Of a stretch of DNA of 64,000 nt, positions 24,769 through 37,253 are shown one piece after another. The DNA lies in IMG/VR virus record IMGVR_UViG_3300024999_000029, positions 1-64,000 of that record; one strand, given 5' to 3'. Positions within the stretch are counted from its first letter, which is position 1, and each line of letters opens with the position of its first letter. Below the pieces are notes generated by a model, which did not search any database, was not told the DNA's origin, and saw nothing but the letters and a program-made list of their open reading frames with translations. The position numbers and the translations under genes were made by a program.

Positions 24769-27562
24769 TATTGCTCCTCCTTCCGTAAATGACGATTTTA
24801 TCTAAGTTCAAAACAATAATAATCACATATAATTTTTATATTTTCACTGATTGCTTCTGTTTCATCATAACAATCAATTGACCAATGAATATCAGAGCAA
24901 AATTCTTTTAAGTCCTCAAACATATATTCATAAGCAAATAATATTTCTTTAACATCAAAGTCAGCCAATAGCTCTTTATATGATTGAGTTATTCCCATTA
25001 GTGATTTAATAGCATCAATAATTTGTCTTTCATCGGTGACAGACATATTTTCTGTGTCTATTTTGAAATTACTATAATCTTCATAATTTCGGAACATTAA
25101 AACTCTCATAATACATCCTTTCTAAGTCAAATAGCTTTTCACTGAACTTCAATTTCCTCAATAGATAAACTAGCAACATCAGATCTAAGTGCTTCATTTT
25201 CGATATAACTCAAAGCCTTTTCTAAACTATCATAAATTGCAAGTATTTGACCATATTCCCAAACTAAATAAACTTTCAAGGCGAATTCTCCTTATAAAAT
25301 ATGCGTTTCATCGTGTTTCTTAAATTTGTAACCCTTGTGGCTGTAGGGCTGTAGCATTAGCCATCTTTTATATTTTCACTATATTAACAATTTGTGTAGC
25401 ATAATATTTATATTTTAAGTTTGTACCCTCATTCAATCTTTCTACTAGAGATTCTTGGATTTTTTCAATTAAATCGCTGGTTATTTCTTCATCTATATAG
25501 ATGATCGTATTAAACAAATCTGGATTCTCATCACCATACGCTGCATAGGCTATAAAATATTTCTGTTCCATACCTACTCCTTTCAATGATATCTCTAATT
25601 TATTGTAATTTTTACCGCACATTGGACAAAAGTTAATTTTAATATCTGATAATTCTAACTCATCGTCGGCAATTAAATTACCATTTCCATCAATATAAAC
25701 ACCTTCACTGCCGTTGCCCATTAAATAATCTCTTGAATCTACATCTACGCTACAATATACACATATATCTTCCATAAAATATCTCCTTTCCATAAAATGC
25801 AAGTTTCAAAGTATTAAATCATCAATAACTCCGCCAGTAAGCTCAAATCTATCGCAATTATTTAAGTTGGAGCAGCATATTTTATACATAAGATCATCTT
25901 CCAAACTACTTTTTGCATGTTTGCATCTAAAACTAGGGTATACTGGACAAGGCAATTCTTCAAAAACTAGTTTCACTGGCTTGCTATCTGAAGGTTCATA
26001 TATAATGTAAGTCATATTTTCATCCATTAACAAACCTAAATCCTTGTCTTTCATATCTCTCTCCTTCCAATAAATCACAATTTTTATATAATTATTTGCC
26101 TACCATTTGTGATAATTGTTGTAATATATTTTGTATAGCAAAGTATTGCGGGTTCACAAAAGCAGTTATTGTATCTTGAAGATTGATTAAAATTACTACT
26201 GTTGGAGCTATTACCCCTATAAATGGAAGCAAACAAATTATCAGATACTCTGGATCACCCTCTCCTTCTTTCCATACCTTTATAGTTAATTTCCAAGATA
26301 TAATGGCAACAATTACTCCAAAAACCATCAATAATATATTTGTAATTCCGACAACATAAGATTGTTTCACAAACAATGGATATAAATTATCAACCGTAGT
26401 TCCTAACTTTATCGCAAGTTCTTTTAACATTTCTAAAAATTTATCCATTTCTTTCTCCCTTATCTTATTATATTTTTAATTATTAACATTTCTTTATCTT
26501 CAAATTCCACAATAACTTGATGTTCGCACTCATCACATTCATGTAAATCTTCTGAAAACTTACCTTTATACGGGCAATACTGCTTCCAATTCTTCTTTGT
26601 CATAACTATTTCGCATAAATGACTGTGTGGTATGTATTCCATTACAAGCACCTCTCAATAAAACCAATTTTTTAACGTAAATTTTCTATCTCAAATCTCT
26701 TTAGTTCTTCTAGCAGTTCATTATCTTCAAAATAAAATGGGTCTCTTTCTAACCCGCCTAACCAATTATTAATAAATTGTCCAAATCTCCAGTCAGGTAC
26801 TTTTCTCCAAACTCTTTCAATTTCACCCAAGAATGGCATTATTCTATTTGGATCTCTCACAAAATTACCTCCAATCATTTTATATTTTAGATTATAGGCT
26901 ATATATAAACTCATTACAAGTCATTTTTAAAAGAATGGGGGTAAATTATTACCCCAAAATAATCAAATTTTACGAATGCCCTAATTGCTCCCAATAATCA
27001 GCGTCTATTTTTTCTTTCTGTTGAATACTAAAGCCTTTGATATCATTGAAATTGAATACTATAACCATATAGCCATTGACTTCTTCTAAAGCTTTTTTAT
27101 TTGCAGATAATAGAACGCATAAAGCTTCCACCGCATCATCAATTTGCTGAGTGTTAACTAACAAAGAACAATTCGTTCTAAACATTTTTTAACCTCCTTT
27201 TAATTAAACGTCATTTCAATATGGCAGTGGTTATCACTAAGCGAAGACACTAAAATAGTTGAATTTCCAAACTTTATTCGCTTGCAATCTCCGTTAATAA
27301 CCTCTACTTTCTTTAATTCATCAATTGTCCCCACAATTTTGATTAATTGTCTGGCTAATTTTCTTTCAACAACATCTTTTTCAATCATTCCATCACCTCC
27401 TCGAAGTTAATAAACTCCAATTATTTTAAACGACTCACTTAAAGTGTATTTTATATTCAAAGGCTTTCGCCTGTTGCTTTTATTGTGACCAGTATGATCC
27501 TCTTAGCCTTTTCATTGTTGAAATGTAATTTTCTATGTATTTTTTGTAATTATAAGGCTCTT

Positions 27563-27720
27563 TCGATGGATTTATGTATACTGTGAACTACCACCACCTT
27601 AGAGGTGGATGGCTTCCTGCTCAATAATGCTAATGCACTAAGTATCAACAGGCTATCCCCGTAATCCCTACGGGTTTTTATATATTTACGCTACTAAACT
27701 TAATATCCTAATTCCTTCTT
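27563..27720 (-). ncRNA. TnpB omegaRNA/reRNA scaffold plus guide (approximate limits)
   Basis: Hairpin CCCGTA-GGGAT-TACGGG, right-end hairpin, TTCAC boundary; guide inferred as AGTATACATAAATCCATCGA. Confidence 0.65.
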
Positions 27721-28804
27721 CTCGTATATTCTTAGCTGCATTGTAATCTCTGTCTATAATAATCCCACATGATTTACATATCCACTCTCTATCAGATAAT
27801 TGCAATTCGTGATTTATTTCTCCGCAATCATTGCATGTTTTGCTAGAAGGATACCATTTATCAACCTTAACTAAATATTTACCTTCGTTCTCTAATTTAT
27901 ATTTAAGCATTGTGGTGAACATGCCCCATCCATTATCTGCAACACTCTTACCTAAATTCAAACACTGACTCATTGCTCTCATATTCAAATCTTCAATTAC
28001 AATTACATTATACTGATTAACTAATTCTCTTGATTTCTTATGAAGAAAATCTTTCCTACAATTAGCAACCTTTTCATGTAACTTAGCAACTTTAATTCTT
28101 TGTTTATTTCGGTTATTACTTCCTTTTTGCATTTTAGATAATTTGCGTTGTTCTTTTGCTAGTTGTTCTAATGTTTGACGATAGAATATTGGATATTCTG
28201 CCCTTATACCTTGATTGTCAGTATAAAGATTCTTCATATCCATATCTAATCCTATAACATTGTTTTTCTCTTTAGGTTGAACATACTGCTCAAATTCAAC
28301 TAATATACTTATATAATATTTTCCAGAAGGTGTTTTAGATATTGAACAAGACTTAATTTCTTGATTACTTGGAATTTCTCTATGTTGTACAATGTTGACC
28401 CAGCCAAGTTTAGGTAGTTTGACTTTCTTATTTTTAATTCTGATGTTTCCACCTTGATTATTTGTAGTATAAGAGTTTCTATCTTTATGCTTACTTTTGA
28501 ATTTAGGAAAGCCAACATTTTTGCATCTAAAGAAATTGACGTATGCTGTTTGTAAATTCATTTGGGCATTAGCTAGAGCCAAACTATCCACTTCTTTAAG
28601 CCATTCAAATTCTGCCTTATATTTAGCAGGAGTAGGATTCTTGTGTTTTTTTAATTCTTCTTTATTATCTTTATATTGTTCATATATATCTTTACGCTCT
28701 GCTAACATTTTATTATATACAAATCTAACACATCCAAAAGTTTTGCTAAATAATATTTCTTGTTCTTCATTAGGATATAGCCTAAATTTATAAGCTTTGT
28801 TCAT
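27686..28804 (-). CDS. tnpB: TnpB RNA-guided endonuclease
   Basis: MNKAYKFRLYP HTH start; RuvC residues IGLD, VIED, DRDYNAA intact; CNDC/CKSC Zn ribbon. Confidence 0.95.
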   Translation of the reverse strand: MNKAYKFRLYPNEEQEILFSKTFGCVRFVYNKMLAERKDIYEQYKDNKEELKKHKNPTPAKYKAEFEWLKEVDSLALANAQMNLQTAYVNFFRCKNVGFPKFKSKHKDRNSYTTNNQGGNIRIKNKKVKLPKLGWVNIVQHREIPSNQEIKSCSISKTPSGKYYISILVEFEQYVQPKEKNNVIGLDMDMKNLYTDNQGIRAEYPIFYRQTLEQLAKEQRKLSKMQKGSNNRNKQRIKVAKLHEKVANCRKDFLHKKSRELVNQYNVIVIEDLNMRAMSQCLNLGKSVADNGWGMFTTMLKYKLENEGKYLVKVDKWYPSSKTCNDCGEINHELQLSDREWICKSCGIIIDRDYNAAKNIREEGIRILSLVA

Positions 28805-29016
28805 ATCTTTTCACCTCCTTGATTTTCAATATATTTTTTAATTACATCAATAGGTACACCACCTGTAGTTATCAAACAAAAACTTCTTGACCAAAAATAC
28901 TCTTTCCATAATTGCTTTCTTATTTGAGGGTATTCCTTCTTAATTAATCTACTACTTGCACTTTTATAAGTATTAATAAATTTCGATATTTCAGTATTTG
29001 GATGTGCTTTGAACAA
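28801..29016 (-). pseudogene. tnpA: C-terminal fragment of Y1 transposase TnpA
   Basis: FKAHP..ISKFINTYKSASSR..FWSRSF..TTGG..VIKKYIENQ; the HUH motif and N-half are missing. Confidence 0.85.
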
Positions 29017-29966
29017 TCTAGTTTAGGTTAAACGGACTTTCACTCCATATTTCTTCAAATTTTCTTTTCATTTTTAACCTCACTATTTTATATTTTAGTT
29101 TATTGGATTATTTGTAAAATTTGATTTACTGCATCCTCTACGTTAATATTTCTTAGCTGTGCTTTTTTCTTCTGGATTTTTAAAGCTTTTACTCCACCGT
29201 CAGCATAGGAAGCATTAATGCTATTATTTTTCTTTAGTTTTTTAAGCCAATTTGGTTTATAAGTTAGTCTTCTACTCATATATTTTCTCCAATATTACTT
29301 TAAAATTCTTCTTTGAACTAAACTGATAAATCTACATTTAAACACTTTAATTTTCTCTGAAGTTCAACAATAACAGACTCTACGTCTTTTATGCTTTCTG
29401 GATTAATAGATACATTTATAGTTATGTTTGCTGATTCTTTCTTATTAAAATAACCACTATCTTCCGCAACTACAATCATATCATTTAAATAATCTCTTAT
29501 TTTAACAGCATTTTCTATTGAAAAAATTGTATTACAACCATCTGTTGATGAATTCATTAAGTAAAAACTACGTCCTTCACTAAGATTGTTGATATATGCC
29601 TCTTTGCTTTTAAAATTACAAGTCAATTCATATTTTTTATTATTTATTTCAATAAATGCACCGCTATCTTCTTTCCACATAATAATCTCCTTTGTGTTTT
29701 ATTTTTGTTTCAAACTGCTATTTTATGGTAATTTCATATCCTTTGTTCTACGCTTTAAATTTCTTAGTGACAAAGAATCAAATTTGTCACAATCCATTCT
29801 GGAGTTTCGTGTTGATTCCCAAAAAAACTCGAAGGAAGGTGTAGTCTTAACTGAATCCTATCTGCATTTCAGACTAAGTTACTTTACTAGCTTTGTCATC
29901 TGCCCTAATGGGTTGCGTTTAAAGTGTAGAGTAAAAGATATGAAATTTCATTAAAATATTGTTTTG

Positions 29967-30103
29967 ATTGTAATTCCCTCCCCTTACAACCATGATTGGT
30001 TAGCAGAGTTGCGAAACCAATCATTCCCTCGTCTAACTTAGTTAACATACTCGGACTCTGCTGTACCTAGTTAACATCATTAGACATGCCGTTTTACTAC
30101 AAT
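29967..30103 (-). ncRNA. Candidate structured RNA with kissing-loop
   Basis: 10-bp hairpin 29992-30024 and multi-helix hairpin 30031-30085; their loops carry complementary AGCAGAGT/ACTCTGCT; G-U pairs favour the minus strand. Confidence 0.55.
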
Positions 30104-30123
30104 ATCATTGTTTTATTAAATTC

Positions 30124-30205
30124 TGGGGTGGGAAGGATTTGAACCTTCCTCAACGTAAAAAGCTTTTTACGTTTCGTACGCTGACCTACCGACAAGGACA
30201 CCCCA
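30124..30205 (-). ncRNA. tRNA-like RNA, 82 nt, no valid anticodon arm
   Basis: Acceptor TGGGGTG/CACCCCA, T-arm GGAAGG-TTCAAAT-CCTTCC, 22-bp perfect palindrome in place of the anticodon/variable arm. Confidence 0.65.
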
Positions 30206-30228
30206 TAAAACTCATCGTTTAAATTAAT

Positions 30229-30341
30229 TATGCGGGTAAGAAATTTCATCTTACATGACTAACATCTTCGTCTAGTTACACAACCACACAGGCTGCACAA
30301 AGTTCGTCAAGCTCCATAGCGTCTTATTCCGCCACCGCATA
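30229..30341 (-). ncRNA. tRNA-like RNA, 113 nt
   Basis: Acceptor TATGCGG/CCGCATA, U8, D-arm GCG-GAATAAGA-CGC, T-like arm GTAAGA-TGAAATT-TCTTAC, ~63-nt insert. Confidence 0.65.
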
Positions 30342-30359
30342 AAACTATTATTTTATATT

Positions 30360-30803
30360 CTATTTCTTATTGCCTACTTTACAAACCCCACTAAGATGAT
30401 CTACTTCATGACATATTATTCTAGCTTGCAATCCTTCGGCTTCTATTTCAGTTTCTTCACCATTCGGAAGATTAAATTTTACTTTAATGATTTCTGGTCT
30501 TTTTATTTTTCTATTTAATTTTGGATAACTTAAACATCCTTCAAATCCTTCAATTGAGCCTTCTCTATATATAATTATTGGATTTATTAAAGGTAGAATC
30601 GTTTCTGATTTTATATCAGTCACAATAATTACTCTTTTAGTTACTCCAATTTGAGGTGCAGCAAGACCAATCCCATCATTTTTCTTCATTGTATCTTCCA
30701 TGTCTTGAATTATGACTAACAATTCTTCATTATATTCGGTTATATCTTCACATTTTTGCTTTAATATTGGATTGTTAAACATACACAATGGTCGTACTGA
30801 CAT
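30360..30803 (-). CDS. def: Peptide deformylase (short C-terminus)
   Basis: GIGLAAPQIG, EGCLS, HEVDH motifs. Confidence 0.95.
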   Translation of the reverse strand: MSVRPLCMFNNPILKQKCEDITEYNEELLVIIQDMEDTMKKNDGIGLAAPQIGVTKRVIIVTDIKSETILPLINPIIIYREGSIEGFEGCLSYPKLNRKIKRPEIIKVKFNLPNGEETEIEAEGLQARIICHEVDHLSGVCKVGNKK

Positions 30804-31074
30804 GATATTTTCTCCTTTGCATGAAACCTGTCATTTATTTGCATTTCTTATACTACTTCAAAACAATTTATCATTAAATAATCTTCATATCCAAAAGGCA
30901 TTCCACATAATTGATATCTTCCTTCTTTATTAATTCCCATGAACATATATTGAACGCTTTTTCCTTCTCTTTTTTTATAAACCATTGTTTTTCGAGGCTC
31001 TAATTTATTCAATTGGTCTCTTGTCATAGTTATTTCCTTTCATAGTTACCTTAAAATCTGCCCTTTAATCAAAC

Positions 31075-31470
31075 TTATTTTTTAATATTTGCTAAGTCTA
31101 TATCTATATTTTGTTTTATACTATTTGGTGGAATGTGAAATTTCCAATCATAAATATCTGCTAATTTAGTTTCATTGCATATTGATACCGCATATGGCTT
31201 TTCTATATTGACATCTTCATAAAAAAATATGTTTTTATATGGTAATTTAATAAGGGATGTCGCTCCAGTGCTGTCTCTTACATAAGCATAATAGTATATT
31301 TCTTCTTTTATTGTTGCTGACCAAATAAAGAATATACCTCCAGCAGAGGCTCCAATATTTGAATTATTTTCAAGAGCTATTAAATCATATCTGTTTTCAG
31401 TCGGCGACTCACATCCAAGTAGTTGTGTAGATAATATTATTATAAGTATTAATATCATTAATTTTTTCAT
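31075..31470 (-). CDS. Putative lipoprotein
   Basis: MKK-hydrophobic-LLGC lipobox. Confidence 0.65.
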   Translation of the reverse strand: MKKLMILILIIILSTQLLGCESPTENRYDLIALENNSNIGASAGGIFFIWSATIKEEIYYYAYVRDSTGATSLIKLPYKNIFFYEDVNIEKPYAVSICNETKLADIYDWKFHIPPNSIKQNIDIDLANIKK

Positions 31471-31510
31471 AATTTCTCCTTTTCTATAAATTAAGCATTT
31501 CGTGGGAATT

Positions 31511-31585
31511 TGGAGACTCTAGTAGGACTTGAACCTACGATGATAGTTTTGCAGACTATCGCCTTACCATCTTGGCTATAGAGTC
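31511..31585 (-). tRNA. tRNA-Cys (GCA), CCA encoded
   Basis: GACTCTA/TAGAGTC acceptor, GCC/GGC D-stem, ATAGT-CTGCAAA-ACTAT anticodon arm, GTAGG-TTCAAGT-CCTAC, U73-CCA. Confidence 0.97.
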
Positions 31586-31595
31586 ATATTAAATT

Positions 31596-31801
31596 GTGGC
31601 TGGCGGGATTGGCTACCCGCAATTGATGGTACTGTGGCTCTAATAATCTACACTAACGCTGCAATACGTTACACCTTTCGCCTAGGACTCTTGCCACCAT
31701 GTGGGTACATTCAGGATGTTCTCACGCCTCGATTATTAGTTTAACCACGCTTTCCACATCGGATTATTGTCTTGACCGCCTTTAAATTTGGCTACAGCCA
31801 C
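31596..31801 (-). ncRNA. tRNA-like RNA, 206 nt, with large structured insert
   Basis: Acceptor GTGGCTG/CAGCCAC, TA-GCC-AAATTTAAA-GGC D-arm, GCGGG-TAGCCAAT-CCCGC T-like arm; insert with CTAATAATC/GATTATTAG helix. Confidence 0.7.
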
Positions 31802-31926
31802 GTATTTCCAACCCTATAAACCCCATACTTTGTTCAAGCAGCTTCCGCAAACTTAGGTTAGTAAAATTAAGGAGGATTCGCACTTGTCGAGCGTTGATCC
31901 AATTTCTCACCTTAATTTAAGTTTTT

Positions 31927-31974
31927 ATCTGTGCTGTCTAACGTTGACAAGTTCCAATATTTCACCACACAGAT
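31927..31974 (-). ncRNA. Minimal tRNA-like RNA, 48 nt (acceptor + D-like + T-like arm only)
   Basis: ATCTGTG-TG-GTGAAATATTGGAAC-TTGTC-AACGTTA-GACAG-CACAGAT. Confidence 0.45.
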
Positions 31975-32110
31975 TTTTAGAGGGAATATAATTTACCTAC
32001 AAATCCCGACATCTAAACACATTAGCAATTTCCACTATCCAATGCCAAACTCAGTCAAGTGTTTCGCTTTCACAGTGGTTTGTGTCAGCTAGTTTAAGCA
32101 AAACTATCTT

Positions 32111-34501: not shown

Positions 34502-37253
34502 ATCTCTCTCCTTTATATGAAACCGAGATTTTATTTACTTTCTTTTATTCTTACAAAATATTCTTTACACAATTTTTCTTCACAAGGAATAGTTTCAATT
34601 ATTTTAAGCCATTCATTATTGTCATTCACCTTATCTTTATACTCTTTAATTAGATCATAAATAAAGTAAAATCCCTGTGCCATCCCAAGCATATAATATT
34701 TATGATCAGATGATTCTTGAAATATTTCTCTATGTATTTTTTCTGCTTCAGTACGTTTATAATAGTTTTTCATTTGCATCATTGGCTCTATATTCATTCT
34801 TAATAATCCTCTCTATAATATCAGTCTTTTATATATTCATTTACACATCCCTTACAAGTTGACCTGCTACATTCACCACAAAAATTCCTTGAGGATTCCA
34901 TCCCACTCCGCCGCCATGACATCCACCTACTTCATCAACAATATCTAATTCTTGTTCAAATATTTCATTTTCCATATTATCTCCTTAAATATGCTCAAAA
35001 TAATACCATTCTACAAGCCATTTTAAGCCACTTTTATTTGGTAGGCTGTATGATTTAACCTGCTGAAATTATGTGAATCATTCAACGTTAATAATAATCT
35101 CACTTTTACAATTGCAAAGTTCTATATAATTTATAATATCAAACGATTCTTCAGGCGTAGCAATTAATATATGTTGGTCTGGCAATTCTAATAATTTTCT
35201 AGCCAATTCATGTGAATCCATTTATATTTTCCTTTCCTTAATGTAATGTTTGATTCAAATTATTTGCAGTACTTTAATAAAATCAGTTCTATTAACAGAT
35301 ACCTCTCTATCTCCAATTTTTAACCATACAATGTCTTTATCTTTTGTAGTTTGTATTATTAATTTGCTAGTAGAAAGAACATTATAGCTATCACTCTCTA
35401 ATTTTAGTTCCATTTTAATATTCATATTTGATTCTCCTTTCTACAAAAGAAATATTTTAATTAGTTTTTAACCAAGGTGTCGGTATTTTATTTAACTTAT
35501 CAAAATTTGGTTCATATGTTGATAAAGTAATTTCTTTCATTTTAGGTAAATAATTTTTATCCATATATTCTGAAATTATTTGACAAGCTGTAGCCATTAT
35601 TTCTTCTTCATCCATATCGTTTACATATGTTTCTACCATAGGCAGTAAAGCACATTGTAATCGAAATAAGAAAAATTGATATTTATTTTTAAATTCGTCC
35701 ATATAATCCTCCTTGATTTGAATCAGACTATCTTTTATTTACAATCTTCACAATATACTTCACCATTCTTTTCTATTAGTGCTTCATTTTTGCATATGTA
35801 GCTCCCACATTTGCTACAAATAACTACTGATGCTTCTAATGATTTTACTGCATCTAGCGGATCATCATAAATGCCCTCAGTAATACTCTCTGGATAAGCA
35901 CAAAAATTTGCTTTATATCCCTCTGATGAAGAATCTGAATAATAAGTCAACTCTACTCTCATGTCAGATTCTTCATTTATTCGTAAGATTAATTCATGTA
36001 AGTTTCCCATAATTCCTCCCTAGATACTATTTCTTGTCATGTTTTACTCGCTTTCTCAAAATCCTCAATTGCTTGTATAGCTTCTTCTTTAGTACAATGA
36101 TATTCTTCCATATAATACATAACTGAAATCATAAAATCATTATATTCTGGTGAATATTCTTTCAACATTGATTCATTCATATAATTTCTCCTCTACTTAA
36201 AACTATCATTTATTGTTTTTATATTTTTCATATGTAAATGATTTTTTATTATCCCAATCTTCAATTAAATCAGTTCTCATCTGCATCATAGTTCCTTGTC
36301 CCCAAGCGATTCTACATAATATATTCATATCCTCATATTTCAAACAAAAATGATAATTTTCAAATGGGTTATCTTCATCTATGAGACACTTGTGTTTATC
36401 AATAGCGTATTCATAGACATCTCTAAACAACAAAGTGAAATCTGCTTCTGAAAACTGATAATTTTTAGGAAAGTATAATATTTCTTCATTATCAATGAAG
36501 TTGTTTTGTTTTAAATGGTTATAAATACTATTCATAATATTGTCTCTTTTTTGTGATAAACACAGCTTATCATTTTCGAGTTGCTCTATTATTTTATTCA
36601 TAGTCTTTATTATTTCTTCACCCGCCAGTTTTTTCATATTTGCCCTACTTTCTTTAAAATTACTATTTTATCATAAATTTCGTTTTTGAACGCCTACTCT
36701 CGTAAGGGTTACAAAGTTGAAAAAGTCTAACATTTCATTATTGTATATATTTTATGGGAGCTACCATTAATTCTCGATGTATAATGTCATAAACTTTAGA
36801 GTGAGTGATTGATAAAAGGATTCCAATGAGAATGTCAATTATTTCAACTTCCATATAAGCTTTCTTAGTATCAATAGTGGCATAAAATATAATTTTATTA
36901 GTCTTAATTTCATATCTATTTATATCAATAGTGCTGCATATATGTATAAACGCACAATTCCTTATAAATAATTTTTGATAATCATCTTCAAAATCTTCAA
37001 TATACATAGATATAACTTCATCTATAAATGCTTTATAATTCATTTCCATAAACACAAACATACCTAGATTTTCGTCTTCACATTTTTTAGCCTCTAAATA
37101 CTTTTTGTATTTGGGATTATTTTTGGCAATCATATCTGCTAACATTTGTAGCTCACTTACAGTGAGTTCATTACTTCGGTCAACATTCTCTTTCATTTCT
37201 TTCATATTAATTTTCATTCTTGTTCTCCTTAATTTTTATTTGAAATGATGCTT

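What the first reader, a model, noticed from the sequence alone, without database searches (positions are those of the whole stretch)
29967..30103. Candidate ncRNA with two hairpins joined by an 8-bp kissing loop
Seen: hairpin ATGATTGGTT/AACCAATCAT (29992-30024) and a three-segment hairpin (GTCTAA/TTAGAC, GTTAAC/GTTAAC, GTAC/GTAT on the minus strand; 30031-30085). Their loops carry exactly complementary 30002-30009 and 30055-30062. An outer ATTGTAGT/ATTACAAT helix closes the unit. Two G-U pairs work only on the minus strand, and GAGGGAAT occurs twice. It lies just downstream of the 82-nt tRNA-like RNA and ends at a boundary site (29950). I cannot match it to a family I know.
Basis: partly seen in the sequence, partly recalled or inferred. 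Interest (0 to 1): 0.6.

Follow-up and report, generated by a model that had tools for sequence, protein, structure and literature searches.

The report
Orphan phage hairpin-pair RNA candidate
A 137-base non-coding stretch in a groundwater phage really does contain two strong hairpins with matching loops and probably belongs to a cluster of structured RNAs next to a tRNA-like gene, but it has no relatives anywhere I could search, so the "kissing loop" and any function are unproven.

Summary
These are a 55-nt three-segment hairpin, a 33-nt hairpin with a perfect 10-bp stem, exactly 8 complementary loop bases, and GAGGGAAT twice.

Context favours a real structured RNA:
- GC is 40% against 29% for the genome.
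- No credible ORF covers it.
- It follows a tRNA-like RNA inside a GC-rich ORF-free block.
- The record also carries pistol, skipping-rope, RAGATH-18 and Fusobacteriales-1 RNAs.

Three points weaken the specific claim:
- The outer helix competes with an equally stable local hairpin.
- A comparable architecture (8-nt loop-loop match, energy -25 kcal/mol or lower) arose in 4 of 11 locally shuffled genomes.
- No homologue exists: Rfam gave nothing, and a covariance model found only itself in the record, 15 related phage records, 70 metagenome loci and 80 TnpB loci.

The 349-kb record is two collinear sister genomes of about 175 kb. The sister lacks the whole cassette (tRNA-Cys, def, RNA A, tRNA-like B, C). 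C is therefore accessory, covariation cannot be tested, and no RNA reads exist.

Best reading: a small stable RNA co-transcribed with, and cut from, the tRNA-like element, comparable to the T4 rnaC/rnaD situation. Its function is unknown.

The parts
29967..30103 (-).
   Evidence: Sequence read. GC. No Rfam match. Single copy by covariance model R1.
30031..30085 (-). Hairpin H1. Three stem segments: 30085-30079/30037-30031, 30075-30070/30046-30041 and 30066-30063/30050-30047. The 12-nt loop is 30062-30051.
   Evidence: Constrained fold. Folded alone: -13.8 kcal/mol, z = -2.5.
29992..30024 (-). Hairpin H2. Perfect 10-bp stem with a 13-nt loop at 30014-30002.
   Evidence: Folded alone: -13.8 kcal/mol, z = -6.8.
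30055..30062 (-). Loop-1 octamer AGCAGAGU, complementary to loop 2
   Evidence: Duplex energy -13.1 kcal/mol.
30002..30009 (-). Loop-2 octamer ACUCUGCU, complementary to loop 1
29966..29991 (-). Alternative third hairpin H3 (GGUUGUAA / UUACAAUC, purine-rich 10-nt loop holding the second GAGGGAA).
   Evidence: The MFE folds choose it. Energies are -28.4 against -28.0 kcal/mol.
30124..30204 (-). tRNA-like element 'B': acceptor stem, canonical T arm (GGUUCAAAUCC), D-loop with GG, a long rod in place of the anticodon arm, and no encoded CCA. Proposed processing signal that would free C's 5' side.
   Evidence: z = -3.99. Weak tmRNA/tRNA-clan match, E = 0.11. Not called by ARAGORN.
30228..30342 (-). 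Structured element 'A' (cloverleaf-like, closed by UUAUGCGG/CCGCAUAA, GC 0.45)
   Evidence: z = -2.3.
30357..30384 (-). Sigma-70-like promoter match (TTGTAA-16-TAGAAT) at the end of def, just upstream of A. Possible start of an A-B-C-D transcript.
   Evidence: This is a consensus match only; such matches are no more frequent here than in shuffles.
29698..29969 (-). Element 'D', which abuts C. It is conserved at 85% in the sister genome, and its long stem shows compensatory changes.
   Evidence: In one search, 60 pairs are predicted, 4 with changes on both sides and none broken.
29970..31592 (-). Accessory cassette absent from the sister genome: tRNA-Cys, ORF131, ORF59, peptide deformylase, A, B and C

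Best explanation
C is most likely a small structured non-coding RNA module of two stable hairpins, plus either a third hairpin or a closing helix. It is encoded on the gene-sense (minus) strand.

It belongs to an accessory, translation-flavoured cassette (tRNA-Cys, peptide deformylase, RNA A, tRNA-like B, C) in a roughly 175-kb SPO1-like phage from groundwater.

Inferred mechanism:
1. The block A-B-C(-D) is transcribed in the same direction as def, either by read-through or from the promoter-like site at 30384-30357.
2. The tRNA-like element B is recognised by RNase P at its 5' end. Because no CCA is encoded, RNase Z cuts after the discriminator A at 30124.
3. These cuts release A on one side and a C-containing RNA starting near 30123 on the other.
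4. Within C, the two hairpins would protect the RNA from exonucleases. Their 8-nt complementary loops pair either within one molecule (a compact fold) or between molecules.

Shown: the sequence features, the composition, the absence of an ORF or family match, and the cassette structure. Inferred: transcription, processing, loop-loop pairing and any biological role.
For: - The hairpins are real and stable.
- G-U pairs and the lower MFE favour the minus strand, the strand of nearly all genes.
- C has GC 0.40 against a genome value of 0.289, in the top 3.7% of ORF-free windows. The A-B-C block (29955-30349) is one of about 18 GC-rich ORF-free segments. Others coincide with tRNA-Cys and the big RNA (window copy), RAGATH-18, the skipping-rope-bearing big RNA (sister copy), and the stretch 3' of tnpB where an omega RNA would be expected.
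- The neighbouring elements D and the roughly 515-nt RNA show compensatory changes between the sister genomes.
- B is strongly tRNA-like.
- No terminator is predicted in the region, so co-transcription is plausible.
- The same layout, a tRNA gene followed on the same strand by 119- and 139-nt stable RNAs, is annotated in phage T4 (their roles are unknown, PMC3014915).
- Conditional on the two loops, the 8-nt match has p = 0.001.
Against: - There is no homologue anywhere, so no covariation.
- All other contigs that carry the locus are 100% identical over it.
- The sister genome lacks the element entirely, so it is dispensable for this phage type.
- No RNA-seq run holds the locus.
- Whole-unit fold z-scores are only -2.1 to -2.5.
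- The kissing architecture is matched or beaten in 4 of 11 locally shuffled genomes.
- The outer helix is ambiguous.
Confidence: 0.45

Rival explanations
1. No dedicated RNA function. The hairpins and the loop match are fortuitous or residual inverted repeats in junk or junction DNA at the edge of a recombined cassette, possibly remnants of the recombination that swapped the cassette in.
For: - C ends exactly at the cassette/indel edge (29969/29970).
- The motif ACAAT stands both at the left flank of the cassette (...CCACAAT, 31593) and at C's last bases (...TTACAAT). AAAACAAT flanks C on both sides at 30114-30107 and 29965-29958.
- The element is single-copy, absent from the sister genome and without relatives.
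- Shuffled genomes reach the same architecture.
Against: - A perfect 10-bp stem (z = -6.8) next to a 17-bp composite hairpin is not typical of neutral AT-rich spacer.
- C has 40% GC and G-U asymmetry on the sense strand.
- It is contiguous with the clearly tRNA-like element B.
Confidence: 0.3
2. A cis-acting part of an mRNA. It could be a 3'-UTR stabiliser of the def transcript, with the hairpins blocking 3' exonucleases. Alternatively it could be the upstream part of the long structured leader (with D) of the 120-aa ORF at 29680-29318.
For: - It has the same strand and no terminator between def and ORF120.
- D directly follows C and ends in a Shine-Dalgarno sequence plus a start codon.
Against: - D works as a leader without C in the sister genome.
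- The tRNA-like B between def and C would be expected to be cleaved, separating C from def.
- No expression platform can be recognised.
Confidence: 0.15
3. A new self-cleaving ribozyme or other catalytic or ligand-binding RNA built on a three-way junction with a loop-loop tertiary contact.
For: - The record carries two pistol ribozymes and a RAGATH-18 RNA, so ribozyme-type elements are in use.
- The junction strands are purine-rich and repeated (GAGGGAAU twice).
Against: - No match to any ribozyme or riboswitch model, even at E up to 10.
- No hammerhead, twister, hatchet or pistol core is visible on reading the sequence.
- The three-way junction itself is uncertain.
- There is no conservation.
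Confidence: 0.05
4. A small protein gene: the 47-aa ORF at 30048-29908 that one pipeline called.
For: JGI annotation called a 47-aa gene here. The frame is open.
Against: - It was not called in the ENA copy of the identical sequence.
- It has no Shine-Dalgarno sequence (read) and matches no PHROG family.
- The frame runs across the cassette edge into element D. In the sister genome D shows single-base gaps in that stretch of the alignment, which I infer would break the frame.
Confidence: 0.03

Closest known systems
Phage T4 stable RNAs rnaC (species 1, 139 nt) and rnaD (species 2, 119 nt) in the tRNA gene cluster
   Same: These are small RNAs of 120-140 nt encoded directly downstream of a tRNA gene on the same strand. 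Their function is still unknown (PMC3014915). T4 rnaC folds with a T arm and an acceptor-like closing stem, much like element B here.
   Different: Model R1 finds no sequence or structure similarity in the T4 region. The T4 RNAs are experimentally detected, whereas C is only predicted. The host and phage lineage also differ.
phi29 packaging RNA (pRNA, Rfam RF00044)
   Same: From my own knowledge of pRNA: a phage RNA of about 120 nt with an end-to-end helix, a three-way junction and two loops that are complementary to each other. In pRNA those loops pair between molecules ('hand in hand') to build a ring.
   Different: There is no Rfam match. pRNA loops pair over 4 nt, against 8 nt here. The closing helix here is uncertain. 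This phage is about 175 kb and SPO1-like, not a 20-kb phi29-like podovirus.
ROOL, GOLLD and other phage-borne ornate RNAs that self-assemble through kissing loops
   Same: They are phage-encoded, lie near tRNA genes and have unknown function. A kissing loop in ROOL, first read as a tertiary contact, proved to be intermolecular (PMC12286853). Short phage-associated RNAs can also form RNA-only multimers (bioRxiv 10.64898/2026.07.01.735769).
   Different: Those RNAs are 500-800 nt, widely conserved and supported by covariation. C is 137 nt, an orphan, and matches neither model.
Purine/lysine-riboswitch-type three-way junctions with L2-L3 loop-loop contact
   Same: On paper the layout is the same: P1, then two hairpins whose loops pair.
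   Different: There is no model match. The arms are very unequal (about 17 bp plus internal loops against 10 bp). No terminator or Shine-Dalgarno-sequestering platform is present. C is not in a 5' UTR of a metabolic gene.

Membership tests
Any Rfam 15 family | Covariance-model score at or near the gathering threshold | tested here: not met
   The gathering scan of the window found only tRNA-Cys. The E<=10 scan of 29600-30450 found nothing over 29967-30103.
phi29 pRNA (RF00044) | Match to the pRNA model | tested here: not met
phi29 pRNA (RF00044) | End-to-end helix plus two hairpins with mutually complementary loops | tested here: inconclusive
   The loops are complementary over 8 nt. The end-to-end helix competes with a local hairpin of equal energy.
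phi29 pRNA (RF00044) | Small phi29-like podovirus context | tested here: not met
   Each genome is about 175 kb. The DNA polymerase (phrog_405) and the 681-aa protein are most similar to SPO1-like Bacillus phages.
phi29 pRNA (RF00044) | Intermolecular ring formation | not testable with these tools
   This needs native gels, SEC or cryo-EM.
Self-cleaving ribozymes (hammerhead, twister, twister-sister, pistol, hatchet, HDV-like) | Conserved catalytic core and model match | tested here: not met
   No hit at E<=10. The pistol model does find two other loci in the same record, so the method works on this genome.
Self-cleaving ribozymes | Site-specific self-cleavage | not testable with these tools
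   This needs an in vitro transcription assay.
T4-type stable RNAs of tRNA clusters (rnaC/rnaD) | Encoded just downstream of a tRNA(-like) gene on the same strand | tested here: met
   C starts 20 nt after tRNA-like B. The T4 layout is shown.
T4-type stable RNAs of tRNA clusters (rnaC/rnaD) | Sequence or structure homology to rnaC or rnaD | tested here: not met
   Model R1 with filters off found only noise in the T4 tRNA region.
T4-type stable RNAs of tRNA clusters (rnaC/rnaD) | Accumulates as a discrete processed RNA | not testable with these tools
   No RNA run holds the locus.
TnpB omega RNA / IS200-IS605 end | Lies at the 3' end of tnpB or at the element's ends, and recurs next to related TnpB genes | tested here: not met
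   C lies about 1.2 kb upstream of tnpB (27686-28804), with D and two ORFs between them. R1 gave no hit in 80 loci with related TnpB genes.
MITE / small mobile element | Multiple copies with terminal inverted repeats and target duplication | tested here: not met
   C is single-copy in the record. The 8-bp flanking AAAACAAT repeat and the 7/8 terminal inverted repeat are within chance for AT-rich DNA; AAAACAAT occurs 126 times in the record.
ROOL / GOLLD | Model match and size of 500-800 nt | tested here: not met

The most novel reading that the evidence does not exclude
C is a self-assembling phage RNA. Its two loops cannot reach each other within one molecule, because the arms are about 17 bp and 10 bp long and joined by a 6-nt linker. 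Instead they pair 'hand in hand' between molecules over 8 bp. This would build rings or filaments in the manner of phi29 pRNA or the newly described RNA-only assemblies, but in a large myovirus-type phage and released from a precursor by tRNA-processing enzymes.
Probability: 0.07. Interest if true: 0.75.

Novelty: new member of a known kind. Interest (0 to 1): 0.3.

Why it matters
If real, C would add to the small, poorly understood set of stable non-tRNA RNAs that phages carry beside their tRNA genes. The T4 examples, rnaC and rnaD, have had no known function for about 50 years.

An 8-bp loop-loop match is a simple handle for testing whether short phage RNAs fold compactly or assemble into multimers.

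As it stands, it is one unconserved candidate in one uncultured phage lineage, so its weight is modest. The surrounding RNA island is the more promising object. It contains the tRNA-like B, element D, and a roughly 515-nt RNA that hosts a skipping-rope module in the sister genome.

Tried and rejected
Searches for a known family or a relative:
- Rfam, at gathering thresholds over the window and at E<=10 over 29600-30450, found nothing for C.
- blastn in 'distant' mode of the whole intergenic region against 50,697 GenBank phage records gave no match.
- Self-BLAST and covariance model R1 over the whole 349-kb record found no second copy of C.
- Every other contig carrying the neighbouring def gene is 100% identical over the region (IMG/VR, ENA, JGI and Logan contigs; the source labels shown say groundwater metagenome), so there is no variation to use.
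- def and ORF131 have no close protein relatives among 5.8 billion proteins, so no syntenic relatives can be fetched.
- Exact-pattern scans of IMG/VR for D, for the big RNA and for tRNA-like B returned only the same phage.
- A metagenome scan with a three-block pattern taken from C's junction strands returned 70 loci. R1 shows that only the window's own record is a true match.
- R1 found nothing in 15 records of phages related by DNA polymerase (56-75% identity). A DNA search of five of them with the whole island matched only about 25-55-nt stretches in or just beside tRNA-Cys and in ORF131.
- R1 found nothing in 80 bacterial loci with related TnpB genes (60-78% identity, mostly Bacillaceae). 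The IS-linked idea is rejected.
- R1 found nothing in the T4 rnaC/rnaD region.

Other checks:
- ARAGORN with relaxed thresholds and introns gave only implausible calls and was discarded.
- The other top 'kissing' locus in the real genome (313.6 kb) is GC-rich and the fold gave no sign of kinship to C; from that I judged it coding, without checking its ORFs, and dropped it.
- No alternative genetic code was used.

Full report
**What the window is.** The window is the first 64 kb of a 349,050-bp IMG/VR virus record. GC is about 29% and nearly all genes are on the minus strand. A self-comparison shows that bases 1-173,475 are collinear with 173,476-349,050, at patchy 65-97% identity. The record is therefore most simply two related genomes of about 175 kb joined together, not one jumbo genome. 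Two independent contigs of about 152-154 kb that carry the same locus fit this reading. The DNA polymerase and a conserved 681-aa protein are nearest to SPO1-like Bacillus phages. The resident TnpB is nearest to Bacillaceae copies. A Bacillota host is therefore likely, by inference.

**The locus.** The finding lies in a 679-nt gap (29681-30359) between peptide deformylase (30360-30803, Pfam E = 1e-40) and a 120-aa ORF. Read on the minus strand, the gap holds four units:

| Unit | Coordinates | Description |
|---|---|---|
| A | 30342-30228 | Cloverleaf-like, GC 0.45 |
| B | 30204-30124 | tRNA-like |
| C | 30103-29967 | The finding |
| D | 29969-29698 | Repeated element |

- B has an acceptor stem, a canonical T arm and GG in the D loop. 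A long rod replaces the anticodon arm and no CCA is encoded. Its fold has z = -4.0 and it matches the tmRNA/tRNA clan weakly.
- D recurs at 85% identity in the sister genome. There, 4 of 60 predicted pairs changed on both sides and none is broken.
- Upstream of def lie two small ORFs and tRNA-Cys.
- Further upstream is a non-coding element of about 515 nt (31590-32105). Its 5' and 3' domains are conserved in the sister genome, while its middle differs. In the sister, that middle is a bona fide skipping-rope RNA.

**Checking the observation.** All the listed features are present at the stated places.
- H2 is a perfect 10-bp hairpin (z = -6.8). H1 is a three-segment hairpin (z = -2.5).
- The loops carry AGCAGAGU and ACUCUGCU, which form exactly 8 Watson-Crick pairs bounded by mismatches. 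The duplex energy is -13.1 kcal/mol.
- GAGGGAAU occurs twice, 50 nt apart. The record has 8 copies in this sense against about 4 expected.
- The G-U pairs work only on the minus strand. The minus strand folds better than the plus strand, -37.4 against -28.5 kcal/mol.
- The outer helix is weak. Its 3' strand can instead pair with GGUUGUAA just upstream to form a third local hairpin. The MFE prefers that hairpin, and the two alternatives differ by only 0.4 kcal/mol.

**Is it more than chance?** Two nulls give different answers.
- Conditional null: given the two loops, shuffling them yields an 8-nt match with p = 0.001. About 17 adjacent strong hairpin pairs with large loops occur per 128 kb on both strands. 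That gives roughly 0.01 expected per window.
- Permissive null: I took all 8-mer inverted pairs 15-80 nt apart and forced both arms to stay unpaired. I kept cases where each arm sits in a hairpin loop of 16 nt or fewer, then ranked them by energy. In the real record C is the second-best locus at -25.0 kcal/mol. The same or better energy appeared in 4 of 11 genomes that were dinucleotide-shuffled in 200-nt blocks. That gives roughly 0.07-0.1 expected per window.
- The truth lies between these two figures. The loop match is suggestive, not decisive.

**Evidence that the region is RNA.**
- C has GC 0.40, in the top 3.7% of ORF-free 137-nt windows.
- The A-B-C block is one of about 18 GC-rich ORF-free segments in the record. 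Others coincide with tRNA-Cys and the big RNA (window copy), RAGATH-18, the skipping-rope-bearing big RNA (sister copy), and the stretch 3' of tnpB where an omega RNA would be expected.
- The record also holds two pistol ribozymes, one in each sister genome, and a Fusobacteriales-1 RNA.
- The only ORF over C is a 47-aa frame called by one pipeline. It has no family match, and it crosses into D. In the sister genome D shows single-base gaps in that stretch, which I infer would break the frame.

**Comparative evidence: none can be had.**
- Rfam gives nothing.
- GenBank phages give no match.
- All other contigs with the locus are identical.
- def and ORF131 have no close relatives, so no syntenic loci can be fetched.
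- A covariance model of C finds only itself in the record, in 15 related phage records, in 70 pattern-selected metagenome loci, in 80 TnpB loci and in the T4 tRNA region.
- In the sister genome the space between the big RNA and D holds only an 82-aa ORF. The 1.6-kb stretch 31592-29970 (tRNA-Cys, ORF131, ORF59, def, A, B, C) is therefore an accessory cassette, and C ends exactly at its right edge.
- Short repeats sit at the edges: ACAAT at both cassette junctions, and AAAACAAT on both sides of C. They may be recombination microhomology, but they are common words in this AT-rich DNA.
- No RNA sequencing run holds the locus, so expression is untested.

**Most likely mechanism (confidence 0.45).** C is a small structured RNA co-transcribed with A and B on the sense strand. 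No terminator is predicted in the region, and a promoter-like site sits at 30384-30357. By established knowledge of RNase P, and of RNase Z acting on CCA-less precursors in Bacillota, the tRNA-like B would be cut out. That would free a C-containing RNA. The layout mirrors phage T4, where tRNA-Arg is followed on the same strand by rnaD (119 nt) and rnaC (139 nt). The roles of those RNAs are still unknown (PMC3014915), and rnaC itself folds with a T arm, like B.

The loops may pair within one molecule or between molecules. A ROOL kissing loop first read as a tertiary contact proved to be quaternary (PMC12286853). This is inference only.

**Rivals.**
- Residual or fortuitous repeats at a recombination junction (0.30).
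- A cis-acting mRNA element, either a def 3'-UTR stabiliser or part of the D leader (0.15).
- A new ribozyme or aptamer (0.05).
- A 47-aa protein gene (0.03).

**Verdict.** The kissing loop and the closed three-way unit are unproven, and the element is an unconserved orphan in an accessory cassette. Interest is modest (0.3). The surrounding RNA island deserves more attention than C itself.

No alternative genetic code was used.

Noticed in passing
whole record G000 (window = G000:1-64000); 1-173,475 vs 173,476-349,050: The 349-kb 'genome' is collinear with itself at 65-97% identity, with offsets of about 157-176 kb. It is probably two related phage genomes of about 175 kb joined in one record, not a jumbo phage. 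'Paralogues' within it are really counterparts in a sister genome.
   Followed up: partly
window 31590-32105 (-); counterpart G000 ~192,775-193,275 (L002 3775-4275, -): A non-coding, GC-rich (0.41) element of about 515 nt lies directly upstream of tRNA-Cys. Its 5' domain (about 110 nt) and 3' domain (about 205 nt) are conserved between the sister genomes, with 2 compensatory pairs. The middle module is swapped. In the sister genome the middle is a skipping-rope RNA (RF02924, 52.5 bits). No Rfam family matches the rest. It is a possible ROOL/GOLLD-like large phage RNA with an exchangeable insert.
   Followed up: partly
window 29698-29969 (-); counterpart G000 192,252-192,524: Element D is about 270 nt and closed by a roughly 40-bp imperfect stem. 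Between the two copies, 60 pairs are predicted, 4 changed on both sides and none is broken. It ends in a Shine-Dalgarno sequence and the start codon of different ORFs in the two genomes. It looks like a structured, portable leader or RNA and has no Rfam match.
   Followed up: partly
window 30124-30204 (-): An 81-nt tRNA-like RNA (B) with an intact acceptor stem, T arm and D-loop GG. A palindromic rod of about 14 bp replaces the anticodon arm and no CCA is encoded. z = -4.0. ARAGORN and the Rfam tRNA model miss it; the tmRNA model scores 9.9 bits. Its design resembles T4 rnaC.
   Followed up: partly
window 30228-30342 (-): Element A is a 115-nt cloverleaf-like fold closed by an 8-bp helix, with GC 0.45 and z = -2.3. 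Its identity is unknown.
   Followed up: no
window 27564-29697 (-): A 2.1-kb insertion relative to the sister genome. It holds ORF120, ORF59, a 71-aa Y1-transposase fragment (28801-29016), TnpB (27686-28804) and a GC-rich 3' stretch (27532-27685) that could be its omega RNA. Some contigs of the same phage carry TnpB split into 221-aa and 148-aa pieces.
   Followed up: partly
G000 ~72,381-72,454 (-) and ~236,061-236,131 (-); 310,107-310,225 (+); 318,535-318,596 (+): Two pistol ribozymes, one in each sister genome (87% identical), plus a Fusobacteriales-1 RNA and a RAGATH-18 RNA in the second genome.
   Followed up: no
window 31980-31987 (minus-sense AUUCCCUC) vs 30023-30030 and 29973-29980: The variable middle of the big RNA carries the exact complement of the GAGGGAAU motif that occurs twice in single-stranded parts of C. 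Also, 9 nt of H1 (30042-30034) are complementary to D (29881-29873). These may be chance or possible RNA-RNA contacts.
   Followed up: no
G000 118,303-119,038; 75,202-75,893; 185,013-185,242; 247,349-247,580; 316,801-317,042; 339,067-339,229; 341,798-341,961; also window 34,803-34,985: Further GC-rich ORF-free segments with no Rfam match. They are candidate structured RNAs that were not examined.
   Followed up: no
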